The position numbers were made by a program, and so were the translations under genes. Shown here piece by piece: positions 43,040 through 56,694 of a stretch of DNA of 64,000 bases. Location of the stretch: positions 182,769 through 246,768 of the IMG/VR virus record IMGVR_UViG_3300025161_000004; one strand, written 5' to 3'. Position 1 is the stretch's first letter. Each line of letters opens with the position of its first letter. The notes beneath the pieces are model-generated. The model made no database searches. It saw only the letters and a list, made by a program, of their open reading frames with translations, and had not been told where the DNA came from.

Positions 43040-43110
43040 GCCCGAATGGTGTAAATAGTAGCATACTTGCTACGCAGCAAGAGGTGTTGGTTCAAGTCCA
43101 ACTTCGGGCC
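43040..43110 (+). pseudogene. Atypical tRNA with a 6-nt anticodon loop (Arg ACG-like)
   Basis: CTTGC-TACGCA-GCAAG; D loop lacks GG; acceptor and T stems intact. Confidence 0.5.
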
Positions 43111-47352: not shown

Positions 47353-47565
47353 ATGAGAAACAAAATTTTCATAAGCCATGCTGCACCTGATGACAACGAT
47401 TTTACTAAATGGTTGGCATTAAAGCTAATTGCCTTGGGTTATGAGGTATGGTGTGATGTTTTATTCTTAGATAGAGGAGTTCACAGTAAACTTATGTATG
47501 AGTTGACAGTAAATTTCTGTAAAATAGCCAATAGCGGCAACATTCCAAATGTTATTATGTTTTAA
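47353..47565 (+). pseudogene. 3'-truncated TIR-domain gene
   Basis: KIFISHAAPDDNDFTKWLALKLIALGYEVWCD, then diverges and stops at 70 aa. Confidence 0.75.
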
Positions 47566-47690: not shown

Positions 47691-47764
47691 GTAACCAAGA
47701 TGATTAAATTTTCGTATAATACAACAAATACGATCCATTAGCATAGTGGTTAATGTAGGACTCT
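47691..47764 (+). repeat. Second copy of the direct repeat (intact tRNA 5' half)
   Basis: See 45964-46036. Confidence 0.85.
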
Positions 47765-47803
47765 CTAAAAGTCTTGAGGTGGGTTCGATTCCCACATGGA
47801 TCA
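47732..47803 (+). tRNA. Amber suppressor tRNA(CTA)
   Basis: GATCCAT/ATGGATC acceptor; GGACT-CTCTAAA-AGTCT; GTGGG-TTCGATT-CCCAC. Confidence 0.88.
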
Positions 47804-47932
47804 CAAAAATTTATTAAATATGATCTTAAAGATATATCACAACACCAATCGGAAGGTTGAATATGAACTGTGGGCTGTGGTGTTTTTATTTAAAAATCAT
47901 AAAAAATAACTTAACAATTTGAAACTTTTTAA

Positions 47933-47950
47933 TAACTTTGTACGTATATA
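47933..47950 (+). promoter_or_regulatory. Promoter of the amber-gated unit
   Basis: TAACTTTG at 47933-47940, then ACGTATATA. Confidence 0.65.
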
Positions 47951-47970
47951 TAAAAAAAAACAGCACAACA

Positions 47971-48324
47971 ATGAAAAGGTAGATATCTAAACTAATTACT
48001 ATAACCAGACAGGATTTACCTATTGGTTATCAAATTGCACAATGCTGCCATTCTGTTGCAGATTTTGCGTACTATCAACCAGAATTATTTAAATATTGGA
48101 GAGAAAATTCTAACTATAAAATATGTCTCTCTGTTAAAGACGAACAATCTCTAATCAAACTTCATAAAAAACTTATTGATAAAGGCGCACAAGTTGTCGC
48201 ATTTATTGAACCTGATTTACAAAATCAAATGACGGCAATTACCTTCTATGGTACTCCTGAGTATCAGAAAGTAACATCATATCTACCACTTGCAGGCAAA
48301 CAATTAAACCATAATATACTATGA
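47971..48324 (+). CDS. Pth2-like peptidyl-tRNA hydrolase with in-frame TAG at codon 4 (missed by the ORF track)
   Basis: ATG AAA AGG TAG ATA...; readthrough gives 117 aa with TRQDL..GYQIAQ..HS...W...K..LSVKDE..L...F.EPDL.NQ.TAI...YLPL. Confidence 0.8.
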
Positions 48325-48578
48325 AATAGATAGTCGATTCAAATCAGAAAGAAGTGATTGTATTCCACTTTAACAAGAAACATTTGGAGGATCCAAATAT
48401 TCCTATGTGGACAATCAAACATAAAGGTAAAACCTATTATGTACATCACTTAACAAGCTATATTGGATTTTCGACAAAAGAAACTCCAGATAATGAGCAT
48501 ACTAAAGGTAGTTTAAAATTTAAAGGTAAATTAAAGATATATGAAAAAGATAATCAGATACTTGCAGAGATAAGCTAA
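48321..48578 (+). CDS. Hypothetical protein with in-frame TAG at codon 3
   Basis: ATG overlaps the upstream TGA (ATGA); ATG AAA TAG ATA GTC... is in frame with ORF 48354-48578. Confidence 0.7.
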
Positions 48579-48586
48579 TATCTAAA

Positions 48587-48659
48587 GCAGGGATAGCCAA
48601 GAGGTAAGGCATGACACAGCAAATGTCACATTCAGGTGGTTCGAGTCCCCTTCCCTGCT
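48587..48659 (+). tRNA. tRNA-Cys(GCA)-like with A33
   Basis: TGACA-CAGCAAA-TGTCA; U73. Confidence 0.65.
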
Positions 48660-48665
48660 CGATAA

Positions 48666-48736
48666 GTCGATGTGGCTGAGTGGTTAGGCATAGGATCGCA
48701 AGTCCTATTAGATTGGTTCGATTCCAGTCATCGACT
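48666..48736 (+). tRNA. tRNA-Cys(GCA)-like with C33
   Basis: TAGGA-TCGCAAG-TCCTA; U73. Confidence 0.65.
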
Positions 48737-48880
48737 CTTTAATTAATAAAGGTATGAATTACAAGTAGGTAACAGCAAGACCACCATAATTGGTGTATTA
48801 TATCATCTTATATATGTTGTATGTAGCTCTGATGATATGAAACATGATCAATAATAAATTTAAGTTAAAAAAAAACAATT

Positions 48881-54933: not shown

Positions 54934-55662
54934 ATGGGAAAAAATGATAGTCTTAGTGACAGGATGAAGCGTTATGAGGATACGTCACGCATATTCCTTT
55001 TAAGAAGGATGTATACCATAATACGTATTGATGGTAAGGCATTTCACACATACACTAAAGAATTAAAGAAACCGTTCGACCATGACTTAATTTATGATCT
55101 GGACGAAACAGCAAAATTCCTTTGTAGAAATATTCAGGGTTGTAAATTGGCGTATATGCAATCGGATGAAATTTCATTGGTTCTCACTGATTTTGATGAA
55201 TTAAATACTTCTGCTTGGTTTGATAATAACATTCAAAAAATTGTATCAGTGTCTGCAAGTATGGCTACATCAAAATTTAATCAAATGAGAGTGCTGAGAA
55301 ATAAAGAATTTTTAAATAAACTAGCATTTTTCGATGCAAGAGCATTTCAAGTCCCAACTAAAACTGAGGTAATTAATTATTTGATTTGGAGACAAAATGA
55401 TGCGATAAGAAATAGTGTACTATCAGTAGCACAATCATTTTACTCACATGAAGAGTTACAAGGTAAAAACATAAATCAGATGTTAAATATGATTTCCAAG
55501 ATAGGTCTTAACTGGGATAATTTACCATCTGGATTGAAAAGAGGTAGATTAATCTATAAAAGACAAGAGAATAAACGTAGTTTTTGGGATTTATTGTCAG
55601 TTACTCCATCACTAAAAGAGGATAAAGAACTAGTTAATAAAATATTACCAAATAATTTTTGA
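54934..55662 (+). CDS. thg1: tRNA-His guanylyltransferase / Thg1-like protein
   Basis: RMKRYE...IRIDGKAFH...QSDEIS...QKIVSVSAS...FDAR...WRQNDA.RNS. Confidence 0.93.
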   Translation: MGKNDSLSDRMKRYEDTSRIFLLRRMYTIIRIDGKAFHTYTKELKKPFDHDLIYDLDETAKFLCRNIQGCKLAYMQSDEISLVLTDFDELNTSAWFDNNIQKIVSVSASMATSKFNQMRVLRNKEFLNKLAFFDARAFQVPTKTEVINYLIWRQNDAIRNSVLSVAQSFYSHEELQGKNINQMLNMISKIGLNWDNLPSGLKRGRLIYKRQENKRSFWDLLSVTPSLKEDKELVNKILPNNF

Positions 55663-55665
55663 TCT

Positions 55666-56694
55666 ATGAATTTTAAGATTGACTTTGATGATTTAATTAT
55701 TGTTCCTAATATATTAACCGATATCAAATCAAGAAAAACAGTTAACCCCTATGATAAATATGGTTATTTACCATTATTTACTGCACCTATGAGTACTGTA
55801 GTTAATAGTAGTAATGCTCAACAATTCACATCCAATAATATCCATGTCGTTTTACCAAGAACAGAAAAATATAAATTCAATCAAAACTATTTTAATTCAT
55901 TTAGTTTAAATGAATTCGAAAGAGAGTTCTTAATTAAAAAATATGATGGTGATGATATAAAAATTTTAATTGATATTGCTAATGGACACATGCAAGACAT
56001 AATTAGATTAGCTAAAGAAGCGAAAAGTAAATATCTTAAAGCAAATCAAACATCTAAATTAACTATTATGGCTGGTAATATCGCTTCACCCGAAACATAT
56101 GAGCTATATTGTAAATCTGGAGCAATAGATTACGTAAGATTGGGAATAGGTAACGGTAATGGTTGTCTTACGACCCAACAGACAGGTATTGGATATCCCA
56201 TTGCTTCACTAATTATTGAGTGTAATCAAATCAAAAATAAATTTAAAAATCCCACTAAAATAGTTGCTGATGGTGGAATGAAAAAATATGCTGATATTAT
56301 AAAAGCATTGGCTTTGGGTGCTGATTATGTAATGGTAGGTTCATTGTTTAATAAAGCATTAGAAAGTGCATCACCTAACTATTGGTATAATTTTAAATTA
56401 CCTAATATTCTCGCAGAATACTTATATAAAAATGGTTATAGTATCTATAAAGAGTTTTATGGAATGAGCACCAAAAAGGCACAAAAGGAAATGGGTAATA
56501 CTCAACTAAAAACAAGTGAGGGAGTTATACGTAAACAAAAAGTAGAATATACATTGTATCAATGGAAGGATAATTTTGAATCTTATTTGAGAAGTGCCAT
56601 GAGTTATACAAATTCCCATAATTTGACTGAATTTATCGGGTCAGTAAATTATGTTCTAATCACTGAAAATTCTTTTTTAAGATATAATAAATAA
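55666..56694 (+). CDS. GMP reductase / IMPDH-family protein
   Basis: FDDLIIVP, APM, DIANGH, GIGNG.GC.T, ADGG...KALALGAD.VM.GS, LRSAMSY. Confidence 0.85.
   Translation: MNFKIDFDDLIIVPNILTDIKSRKTVNPYDKYGYLPLFTAPMSTVVNSSNAQQFTSNNIHVVLPRTEKYKFNQNYFNSFSLNEFEREFLIKKYDGDDIKILIDIANGHMQDIIRLAKEAKSKYLKANQTSKLTIMAGNIASPETYELYCKSGAIDYVRLGIGNGNGCLTTQQTGIGYPIASLIIECNQIKNKFKNPTKIVADGGMKKYADIIKALALGADYVMVGSLFNKALESASPNYWYNFKLPNILAEYLYKNGYSIYKEFYGMSTKKAQKEMGNTQLKTSEGVIRKQKVEYTLYQWKDNFESYLRSAMSYTNSHNLTEFIGSVNYVLITENSFLRYNK

What the first reader, a model, noticed from the sequence alone, without database searches (positions are those of the whole stretch)
47732..48324. Amber suppressor tRNA next to a Pth2-like gene locked by an in-frame TAG at codon 4
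Seen: an intact tRNA with anticodon CTA (47765-47767). About 170 nt downstream is a promoter and ATG AAA AGG TAG ATA..., which continues open to 48324 as a Pth2-like hydrolase that the ORF track missed. TAG is a normal stop elsewhere in the window (2685, 15034, 17114, 41033), so the genome is not globally recoded. Established: Pth recycles dropped-off peptidyl-tRNA, and very short minigenes (lambda bar) provoke drop-off. Inference: a stop-codon counterpart of the attenuators. Pth would be made only when suppressor readthrough beats RF1, for example when termination is impaired or late in infection.
Basis: partly seen in the sequence, partly recalled or inferred. Interest (0 to 1): 0.9.

Follow-up and report, generated by a model that had tools for sequence, protein, structure and literature searches.

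The report
Amber-gated hydrolase gene beside its suppressor tRNA
A giant phage keeps a stop codon at the fourth codon of a peptidyl-tRNA-hydrolase-like gene, right beside a tRNA that can read that stop, and about fifty related phage lineages share the arrangement, so it looks like a built-in translational switch rather than a mutation.

Summary
The window has an intact tRNA(CUA) at 47732-47804. A PTH2-fold gene lies 166 nt downstream and reads ATG AAA AGG TAG, then 113 open codons with no usable start.

It is not a nonsense mutation. I collected 131 related phage loci, which fall into 69 clusters at 90% identity.
- 50 clusters carry an ATG, then 0-9 sense codons, then an in-frame stop just before the first strand of the domain. 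The stop is TAG in 49 and TAA in 1.
- 34 of the 50 have a suppressor tRNA in the DNA fetched. All 69 suppressors found lie on the same strand as the gene.
- The one TAA gate sits with a tRNA(UUA).
- Three lineages have a second TAG inside the domain.
- dN/dS after the stop is about 0.1.
- Shine-Dalgarno sites serve the ATG upstream of the stop.
- Neither the window nor the flanks of the low-G+C (gated) relatives show general TAG recoding.

A second window gene (48321-48578) and an HD-domain gene in relatives carry the same gate.

Best reading: a suppressor-dependent translational gate, in effect a small suppressor regulon in standard-code huge phages.

What is not shown: readthrough itself, the inserted residue and the enzyme's activity. 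The usual catalytic Lys and Asp positions hold Tyr and Glu. One large clade has the gate but no canonical tRNA(CUA). I found no published description.

The parts
47732..47804 (+). Amber suppressor tRNA, anticodon CUA at 47765-47767, short variable arm, discriminator A
   Evidence: ARAGORN. Rfam tRNA 63.7 bits, full length. Homologous position to the same-strand suppressor tRNAs next to the gene in relatives.
47971..47979 (+). Three-codon leader ATG AAA AGG (Met-Lys-Arg) after an A-rich untranslated leader with no Shine-Dalgarno site
   Evidence: Sequence. In relatives that use Shine-Dalgarno sites, GGAG lies 6-9 nt before this ATG, not before a codon after the stop.
47980..47982 (+). In-frame amber codon (the gate), followed by A
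   Evidence: The equivalent stop is present in 50 of 69 clusters of relatives (49 TAG, 1 TAA). It always lies a few codons (0-7 where listed) before the first beta strand and is always followed by a purine.
47983..48324 (+). PTH2-fold hydrolase-like coding region, 113 codons plus TGA
   Evidence: Pfam PTH2 E 3.5e-9. A profile of 31 relatives hits solved Pth2 structures (2zv3, E 1.9e-8). AlphaFold2 pLDDT 93.9. Foldseek best matches are archaeal Pth2 and human Bit1, TM 0.69-0.76. dN/dS about 0.1 in relatives.
48321..48329 (+). Second gate: ATG AAA TAG. The ATG overlaps the TGA of the hydrolase gene (ATGA).
   Evidence: Homologues in L012 and L013 start Met-Asn-Lys-Val-Ile after a strong Shine-Dalgarno site. 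The window's TAG aligns with their Lys codon.
48330..48578 (+). Small conserved gene of unknown function (82 codons after the TAG)
   Evidence: tblastn finds homologues directly downstream of the hydrolase gene in L012 and L013, 58-62% identity from the first residue after the TAG. No Pfam, PHROG or NCBIfam match.
48587..48737 (+). Two tRNA-Cys(GCA) genes that close the module (context)
   Evidence: ARAGORN and Rfam.

Best explanation
**Setting.** The window is the last 64 kb of a 246.8-kb phage contig. It has 28.8% G+C, 35 tRNA genes and standard stop-codon use.

**The module.** On one strand it carries an amber suppressor tRNA(CUA), a PTH2-fold hydrolase-like gene whose fourth codon is TAG, and a small gene whose third codon is TAG.

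**Proposed mechanism.** Ribosomes start at the ATG at 47971 and meet UAG after three codons. If release factor 1 wins, only a tripeptide is made. If the phage's charged tRNA(CUA) wins, the full protein is made.

The gate therefore ties these proteins to the presence and activity of the suppressor. It works as a translational AND gate or timer. The early position makes failure cheap. It puts the inserted residue in a tolerant N-terminal tail. The purine after UAG favours suppression.

**Shown.**
- The anatomy.
- Conservation of the stop.
- Linkage to suppressor tRNAs, and the match between stop codon and anticodon.
- Purifying selection downstream of the stop.
- Placement of the ribosome-binding site on the upstream ATG.

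**Inferred.**
- That readthrough happens.
- Which residue is inserted.
- That the purpose is to supply a peptidyl-tRNA-handling enzyme in step with suppressor activity.
For: 1. **The stop is conserved.** All five closest relatives in huge uncultured phage genomes of 460-735 kb have ATG, 1-2 codons, then TAG ATT before the domain. Across 131 loci in 69 clusters, 50 clusters are gated: 49 with TAG and 1 with TAA. 48 of the 50 have no ATG/GTG/TTG between the stop and the first strand.
2. **Suppressors are linked.** 34 of 50 gated clusters have a suppressor tRNA in the DNA fetched, against 3 of 19 ungated clusters (Fisher p 1.2e-4, not corrected for phylogeny). All 69 suppressors are on the gene's strand. 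The median distance from the start of the domain to the nearest suppressor is about 1.1 kb, range 0.26-5.7 kb.
3. **Stop codon and anticodon match.** The TAA gate in L062 sits with tRNA(UUA) and no CUA tRNA. L130 has a TAG gate with tRNA(UUA), which can also read UAG by wobble.
4. **Internal in-frame stops.** A second in-frame stop lies inside the domain in L005 and L035 (both TAG) and in L014 (codon not read). Each locus has a CUA tRNA nearby. A downstream start cannot explain these.
5. **The start is upstream of the stop.** GGAG lies 6-9 nt before the ATG that precedes the stop in ten lineages.
6. **The codon after the stop is often not a possible start.** It is GTT, GTA, ACA, AGC, AAC, AAA or GGT in 14 of 50 clusters, and begins with a purine in 50 of 50.
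7. **The protein is under selection.** dN/dS after the stop is 0.07-0.17 in six groups.
8. **No general recoding.** No TAG joins two long open frames in the window. In the low-G+C flanks such TAGs are no more frequent than TAA or TGA.
9. **Other gated genes.** The gate recurs in the window's next gene and in all 13 copies of a neighbouring HD-domain gene in relatives.
Against: - There is no direct evidence of readthrough.
- One large clade (L001, L003, L007, L009, L010 and about 26 metagenome loci) has the gate on both the hydrolase and HD genes. It has no suppressor in the flanks.
- The complete 634,780-bp genome LR745206 has about 59 tRNAs and no canonical tRNA(CUA). The only candidate there is an unusual GC-rich tRNA-like element with a CUA loop.
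- In that clade the stop is always followed by ATT, a weak start codon.
- Three ungated clusters also sit next to suppressors, so linkage does not require a gate.
- Only 64 kb of the 246.8-kb contig was examined, so other TAG-containing genes may exist elsewhere.
- The loci were collected with a peptide pattern (PGYQAVQ), which biases the sample. The association test is not corrected for phylogeny and is limited by flank length.
Confidence: 0.72

Rival explanations
1. The ATG-to-TAG stretch is a separate mini-ORF. The hydrolase is translated by re-initiation at the ATA or ATT just after the stop, or at another non-canonical start, with no suppressor needed.
For: The codon after the stop is ATT, ATA or ATC in 35 of 50 gated clusters. 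It is always ATT in the clade that lacks a canonical tRNA(CUA).
Against: - In 14 of 50 clusters the codon after the stop (GTT, GTA, ACA, AGC, AAC, AAA, GGT) is not a recognised start.
- Three lineages have further in-frame stops inside the domain; those in L005 and L035 are TAG.
- A plain upstream ORF should mostly end in TAA, which ends 49 of the window's 75 long open frames against 8 for TAG. Yet 49 of 50 gates use TAG.
- The one TAA gate has a UUA tRNA beside it.
- Shine-Dalgarno spacing fits the upstream ATG.
Confidence: 0.1
2. The phage recodes TAG generally in a subset of genes (code-15 style, late genes). The hydrolase gene is just one recoded gene among many, with nothing special about it.
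For: These phages carry suppressor tRNAs. Recoding limited to part of a genome is documented in phages (bioRxiv 10.1101/2021.08.26.457843, read). Some relatives have two in-frame stops in the gene. 183 kb of this contig was not seen.
Against: - No other gene in the 64-kb window is interrupted by TAG, and several real genes end in TAG.
- The 3-6 kb flanks of the low-G+C gated relatives show no excess of TAGs joining long open frames.
- The stop keeps the same position across relatives that share only about 40% identity. Scattered recoding would not do that.
Confidence: 0.1
3. The gate senses release factor 1 activity rather than a dedicated suppressor. UAG is read by near-cognate tRNAs when RF1 is scarce or inhibited during infection.
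For: TAG is the only stop read by RF1 alone (established knowledge). The clade without a canonical tRNA(CUA) keeps TAG strictly.
Against: In the window and in 34 gated clusters a cognate suppressor lies next to the gene. The TAA gate with its UUA tRNA fits tRNA decoding and does not fit RF1 specificity.
Confidence: 0.06
4. Nonsense mutation, pseudogene or sequencing error.
For: A single stop at codon 4 in one contig could be an error if seen alone.
Against: The same feature appears in 50 clusters from many samples. dN/dS downstream is about 0.1 and the PTH2 fold is intact.
Confidence: 0.01

Closest known systems
Stop-codon recoding with phage-encoded suppressor tRNAs (crAss-like, Lak and other code-15 or code-4 phages; Ivanova 2014; Borges et al., preprint read)
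   Same: A phage-encoded tRNA(CUA) reads in-frame TAG in phage genes while the host uses the standard code. It has been proposed to time gene expression.
   Different: In those phages many structural and lysis genes carry scattered in-frame stops. Here the genome region reads as standard code. The stop is a single conserved site at the N-terminus of one or two translation-related genes that lie beside the tRNA. Neither the preprint nor the huge-phage paper mentions a hydrolase target.
prfB (release factor 2) autoregulation through an early in-frame UGA (own knowledge)
   Same: An early in-frame stop in a translation-factor gene acts as a sensor of decoding and termination capacity.
   Different: prfB escapes by a +1 frameshift and senses its own product. 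Here escape would be by a cognate suppressor tRNA, no frameshift is needed, and feedback on the enzyme itself is unproven.
Synthetic amber-gated AND gates (T7 RNA polymerase with amber codons plus the supD tRNA; own knowledge)
   Same: The logic is the same. The output protein appears only when both its mRNA and a suppressor tRNA are present.
   Different: That is an engineered circuit. This would be a natural, evolutionarily conserved one.
Archaeal and eukaryotic Pth2 (PF01981; PDB 2zv3, 3erj, 1q7s, 1wn2, 1xty)
   Same: The fold and length match. Profile E is 1.9e-8 and TM 0.69-0.76.
   Different: The GKGK and DAG motif positions read PGYQ and EPD. Scores fall below the NCBIfam equivalog cutoffs. 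The family is essentially confined to phages: only four hits in 185,579 species genomes, all MAG contigs, one of them a 425-kb contig also listed in the viral collection.
Lambda bar minigenes and host pth (own knowledge)
   Same: Very short ORFs next to a link with peptidyl-tRNA hydrolase biology.
   Different: bar minigenes are free-standing toxic mini-ORFs. Here the mini-leader is in frame with a conserved protein, its length varies from 0 to 9 or more codons, and its stop matches a linked tRNA anticodon.
Orphan suppressor tRNAs of cultured jumbo phages (XacN1; PMC5852040)
   Same: A standard-code giant phage has tRNA(CUA) genes whose targets the authors could not find.
   Different: The Pth of XacN1 (ORF295) is a canonical PTH2 with an ordinary ATG. 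The gene before its suppressors is a membrane protein. It is not an instance of this module.

Membership tests
PTH2 peptidyl-tRNA hydrolase family (PF01981) | Sequence match above Pfam's gathering score | tested here: met
   37.3 bits against 23, E 3.5e-9, covering residues 3-76. A profile of 31 relatives hits solved Pth2 chains over the full length.
PTH2 peptidyl-tRNA hydrolase family (PF01981) | PTH2 alpha/beta fold | tested here: met
   AlphaFold2 pLDDT 93.9, pTM 0.87. The Foldseek top 12 are all Pth2, Bit1 or a structural homologue (Ta0108), TM 0.69-0.76.
PTH2 peptidyl-tRNA hydrolase family (PF01981) | Equivalog-level match to archaeal Pth2 (TIGR00283, NF003314) | tested here: not met
   29.4 bits against a cutoff of 82, and 24.5 against 126. 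It is a divergent subfamily. PHROG 1866 lists it as 'unknown function'.
PTH2 peptidyl-tRNA hydrolase family (PF01981) | Catalytic Lys (GKGK motif) and Asp (DAG motif) as reported for archaeal Pth2 (own knowledge) | tested here: not met
   In the profile alignment to 2zv3 these positions hold Tyr (PGYQ) and Glu (EPD). His23, Glu76, Pro77 and Asp78 are invariant within the family. An altered active site is possible.
PTH2 peptidyl-tRNA hydrolase family (PF01981) | Hydrolysis of peptidyl-tRNA | not testable with these tools
   Needs an enzyme assay or complementation of a pth(ts) strain.
Amber suppressor tRNA | Canonical cloverleaf above the tRNA model threshold, with anticodon CUA flanked by U33 and a purine at position 37 | tested here: met
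Amber suppressor tRNA | Aminoacylation and decoding of UAG in vivo | not testable with these tools
   Similarity to other tRNAs gave no identity; best matches are about 70%. Weak hints only: internal TAGs align mostly with Glu, and the TAG of the window's second gene aligns with Lys.
Code-15 (TAG-recoded) phage | Many conserved genes interrupted by in-frame TAG, with better coding density when TAG is read as sense | tested here: not met
   No TAG in the window joins two open stretches of 60 or more codons. Reading TAG as sense gains less open frame than reading TGA as sense. Only 64 kb of 246.8 kb was seen.
Programmed stop-codon readthrough site | The stop is conserved at the same site in diverged homologues, with purifying selection downstream | tested here: met
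   50 of 69 clusters. dN/dS 0.07-0.17.
Programmed stop-codon readthrough site | Stop identity changes together with the decoding tRNA | tested here: inconclusive
   One TAA gate with tRNA(UUA) (L062), and one TAG gate with tRNA(UUA) that is compatible by wobble (L130). No TGA/UCA case was found. The direction is right but the number is tiny.
Lambda bar-type minigene | Free-standing 2-3 codon ORF whose expression is toxic when Pth is limiting | not tested
   The leader is in frame with the gene. Its length varies from 0 to 9 codons and reaches 10 or 14 codons (two in-frame ATGs) in L117. Toxicity cannot be tested here.

The most novel reading that the evidence does not exclude
Standard-code huge phages carry a dedicated, self-contained 'suppressor regulon'. 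A private suppressor tRNA has only a handful of targets, each with an N-terminal stop codon: a PTH2-fold hydrolase, an HD phosphohydrolase, small neighbouring genes, and homing endonucleases that copied the gated 5' end. In one clade the tRNA may be a structurally non-canonical tRNA-like RNA with a 6-bp D stem. The PTH2-fold enzyme may act on products of suppression, or on the suppressor's own ester. That would close a feedback loop that sets how much readthrough the infected cell experiences.
Probability: 0.2. Interest if true: 0.92.

Novelty: new variant of a known kind. Interest (0 to 1): 0.82.

Why it matters
**A target for orphan suppressors.** Suppressor tRNAs are common in giant phages that otherwise use the standard code, and their targets have been an open question. 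The XacN1 authors, for example, searched for targets and found none (PMC5852040).

This finding offers a concrete, conserved target class. Gene callers cannot see these genes, because no canonical start follows the stop.

**A natural logic gate.** It would be a natural counterpart of the engineered amber-codon-plus-suppressor logic gate. It may also represent the earliest stage on the proposed path from 'standard code plus suppressor' to full stop-codon recoding.

**Easy to test.** A leader-TAG reporter with or without the tRNA would do it.

**Annotation.** These genes and their HD-domain neighbours are systematically missing or truncated in phage protein sets.

Tried and rejected
- **DNA similarity.** blastn of the region against phage records found nothing.
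- **Six-sequence alignment.** It was too divergent for the locus finder. The window protein alone found only its own contig. A three-sequence alignment worked.
- **XacN1 as a cultured example.** Rejected. Its Pth is a canonical, ungated PTH2, and the ORF next to its suppressors is a membrane protein.
- **Amino-acid identity of the suppressors.** Similarity to other tRNAs was uninformative, at about 70% to many types.
- **Canonical tRNA(CUA) in the complete genome LR745206.** None found. Relaxed ARAGORN calls with long introns lie in coding-like sequence and were dismissed.
- **More copies of the unusual tRNA-like element.** Exact-pattern searches of the viral collection found none.
- **Its fold.** The minimum-free-energy fold did not give a cloverleaf. 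The hand-drawn cloverleaf is supported only by two sequences.
- **Promoter claim.** Not supported.
- **Backup stops after TAG-terminated genes.** They are no closer than after TAA or TGA.
- **Same-frame ORF pair joined by TGA (54934-56694).** Two ordinary genes, Thg1 and an IMPDH-like gene.
- **HD protein.** No solved relative by sequence.
- **Literature.** Four searches found no paper linking Pth2 with suppressor tRNAs or N-terminal stops in phages. The library is incomplete.

Full report
**1. What is in the window**

The window has 28.8% G+C and 35 tRNA genes. Most genes are on the + strand. It is the last 64 kb of IMG/VR contig IMGVR_UViG_3300025161_000004, which is 246,768 bp long.

- **tRNA.** At 47732-47804 ARAGORN and Rfam agree on a canonical 73-nt tRNA with anticodon CUA. 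Rfam gives 63.7 bits against a gathering score of 29.
- **Gene.** 166 nt downstream the sequence reads ATG AAA AGG TAG ATA. It then stays open for 113 codons to TGA at 48322-48324.
- **No downstream start.** No ATG, GTG or TTG occurs in frame until codon 82 after the TAG. This explains why ORF lists miss the gene.
- **PTH2 fold.** The piece after the TAG is a PTH2-fold protein.
  - Pfam PF01981 gives E 3.5e-9.
  - A profile of 31 relatives hits solved Pth2 structures (2zv3, E 1.9e-8).
  - The AlphaFold2 model has pLDDT 93.9.
  - The best PDB matches are archaeal Pth2 and human Bit1, TM 0.69-0.76.
- **Standard code.** TAG ends 8 of 75 long open frames. No TAG in the window joins two open stretches of 60 or more codons. 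This part of the genome reads as standard code.

**2. The stop is conserved, not an accident**

tblastn against phage records found the closest relatives in huge uncultured phage genomes: LR745206, LR756500, LR756501/3, LR756502 and LR756504, 460-735 kb. All five loci have ATG, one or two codons, then TAG ATT just before the domain.

I then collected further loci:
- 57 from the viral collection;
- 80 from metagenomes;
- 4 from the species-genome collection. All four are MAG contigs. One is a 425-kb contig also present in the viral collection, filed under an archaeal MAG.

In a uniform tally, 131 loci fall into 69 clusters at 90% identity.
- 50 clusters are gated: 49 with TAG and 1 with TAA.
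- The leader between ATG and the stop has 0-9 sense codons, mostly 1-2.
- 48 of 50 have no canonical start between the stop and the first beta strand.
- The base after the stop is a purine in all 50. The next codon is ATT in 28, ATA in 6, GTT in 6, GTA in 3, and others once each.

The stop always lies a few codons (0-7 where listed) before the conserved Lys-Leu-(Ile/Val)-x-Ile-Thr-Arg strand, whatever the leader length.

The coding sequence after the stop is under purifying selection. dN/dS is 0.07-0.17 in six groups.

**3. The stop is tied to a suppressor tRNA**

- **Position and strand.** ARAGORN finds suppressor tRNAs in the fetched DNA of 34 of 50 gated clusters and 3 of 19 ungated clusters. 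Fisher p is 1.2e-4, not corrected for phylogeny and limited by flank length. All 69 suppressors are on the gene's strand. They usually lie just downstream; the median distance from the domain start is about 1.1 kb. In the window the tRNA lies upstream.
- **Diversity.** The suppressors are very diverse (37 unique of 45) and all have short variable arms.
- **Matching anticodon.** The single TAA gate (L062) has a tRNA(UUA) and no CUA tRNA. Its gene is intact apart from a one-base indel. L130 has a TAG gate with tRNA(UUA), which can also read UAG by wobble.
- **Negative controls.** Relatives inside large tRNA arrays with no suppressor (L019, L034) are ungated.
- **Internal stops.** L005 and L035 carry a second in-frame TAG inside the domain, and L014 a second in-frame stop whose codon I did not read. 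Each has a CUA tRNA nearby. Only decoding of the stop can explain these.
- **Ribosome-binding sites.** Where Shine-Dalgarno sites are used, GGAG sits 6-9 nt before the ATG that precedes the stop.
- **Flanks.** The flanks of the low-G+C gated loci show no excess of TAGs joining long open frames.

**4. More than one gated gene**

- **In the window.** The next gene begins ATG AAA TAG ATA at 48321, overlapping the hydrolase stop. Its homologues in L012 and L013 sit in the same place but start Met-Asn-Lys-Val-Ile after a strong Shine-Dalgarno site. The window's TAG aligns with their Lys codon.
- **In relatives.** A roughly 190-residue HD-domain protein lies next to the hydrolase gene in 13 loci. 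The Pfam HD match is weak, and it belongs to PHROG 14850. All 13 copies have ATG, 1-3 codons, then TAG.
- **Homing endonucleases.** In L051 and L063 an HNH endonuclease ORF is fused to a duplicated 5' end of the hydrolase gene, gate included.

The suppressor therefore seems to serve a small set of neighbouring genes.

**5. The main difficulty**

One large, mostly freshwater clade keeps ATG-x-x-TAG-ATT on both the hydrolase and HD genes. It comprises L001, L003, L007, L009, L010 and about 26 metagenome loci. It has no suppressor in its flanks.

I fetched the complete genome LR745206 in 13 pieces. It has about 59 tRNAs and no canonical tRNA(CUA).

The only candidate is a GC-rich element (59% G+C in a genome region of about 28%) at about 507,340.
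- It has a GGTTCGA T loop and a UUCUAAC loop.
- It has a 78%-identical homologue in LR756502.
- A cloverleaf with a 6-bp D stem pairs fully in both copies. It has four compensatory double changes, against 45-63% pairing in shifted controls.
- It rests on only two sequences. It scores below the Rfam threshold and was not found elsewhere.

So for this clade either a non-canonical suppressor, a host factor, RF1 sensing or ATT re-initiation remains possible.

The strict use of TAG argues for a TAG-specific mechanism there too. TAA is six times commoner than TAG as a stop in the window.

**6. How it most likely works**

Initiation is at the upstream ATG. UAG is reached within a few codons, and RF1 and the charged suppressor compete. 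Only suppression yields the protein.

- The conserved N-terminal position keeps the inserted residue outside the fold and makes failed attempts cheap (inference).
- A purine after UAG is the context known to favour amber suppressors in E. coli (own knowledge of Bossi, and of Miller and Albertini, 1983).
- The gate therefore couples these proteins to suppressor activity. It could act as a delay timer after tRNA maturation. It could also deliver a peptidyl-tRNA-handling enzyme in proportion to suppression (inference).

Whether the enzyme is a true peptidyl-tRNA hydrolase is open. The positions aligned with the archaeal GKGK and DAG motifs read PGYQ and EPD, and the equivalog cutoffs are not met.

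**7. Comparison and novelty**

The nearest known phenomenon is suppressor-tRNA-driven stop-codon recoding in phages. That involves many scattered stops in late genes. Neither the main recoding preprint nor the huge-phage paper mentions a hydrolase target or N-terminal gates. A 2026 jumbo-phage survey does not either.

The logic resembles prfB's early in-frame stop and synthetic amber-codon AND gates (own knowledge). Four literature searches found no description of this module.

I rate it a new variant of a known kind, of high interest. It gives orphan phage suppressor tRNAs a conserved target, and it is simple to test.

Noticed in passing
L001:3989-4576; L007:6963-7544; L009:7023-7607; L020:5394-5987; also L025, L030, L041, L042, L049, L052-L054: A roughly 190-residue HD-domain protein next to the hydrolase gene carries the same ATG, 1-3 codons, TAG gate in all 13 copies. 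It is PHROG 14850, function unknown. It is absent from the window.
   Followed up: partly
L076:19640-19721 (LR745206 about 507,340) and L159:301-385 (LR756502): A GC-rich, non-canonical tRNA-like element with a UUCUAAC loop (anticodon CUA), a 6-bp D stem and a 9-nt linker after the acceptor stem. Four compensatory changes separate the two copies. It is a candidate suppressor in genomes that lack a canonical tRNA(CUA).
   Followed up: partly
L051:1927-2700 and L063:5989-6735: An HNH homing-endonuclease ORF is fused to a duplicated 5' end of the hydrolase gene, including the ATG-TAG gate. A complete gated copy of the gene follows.
   Followed up: no
window 47353-47565: A 70-codon ORF matches only the first third of a TIR domain (TIR_2, E 1.2e-5, below cutoff). 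It looks like a truncated gene just upstream of the suppressor tRNA.
   Followed up: no
L023:6737, L024:6332, L036:5950 and 6026, L044:7306 and 7384, L045:1537, L046:7494, L048:7421 and 7957, L058:7445, L059:7933: High-G+C, ungated relatives have tRNAs downstream of the hydrolase gene, in the place where gated loci have suppressors. ARAGORN gives these tRNAs odd anticodon loops ('tc', 'ttca', or Glu UUC). They are among the closest matches of several CUA suppressors (72-78%).
   Followed up: partly
window 43040-43110: ARAGORN reports a tRNA with a two-base 'anticodon' (cg), that is, an abnormal anticodon loop, inside the tRNA array.
   Followed up: no
L022:5940-6010: The hydrolase gene has no start in frame. 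A mini-ORF ATG AAG CGG ATC TAA lies one base out of frame just upstream, right after a tRNA-Gly. It may be an indel or a decayed gate.
   Followed up: no
L018:2170-2583: The gated hydrolase ORF reads on through the whole downstream tRNA(CUA) gene (2499-2570) before reaching a stop.
   Followed up: no
window 54934-56694: Two ORFs in the same frame separated only by TGA are separate ordinary genes: Thg1-type tRNA-His guanylyltransferase and an IMPDH/GMP-reductase-like protein.
   Followed up: yes
L161 (JBBACR010000001.1, 425,361 bp): A contig with the same length as the viral contig of L039, and carrying the same gated gene, is filed in the species-genome collection as a Pacearchaeota MAG. This looks like a mis-binned phage genome. 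Three other gated loci are binned with Bacteroidota MAGs.
   Followed up: no
PHROG 14850: The hydrolase piece weakly matches the first 74 positions of the 270-position profile whose remainder is the HD protein. This hints at fused or merged hydrolase-HD gene models in some phages.
   Followed up: no
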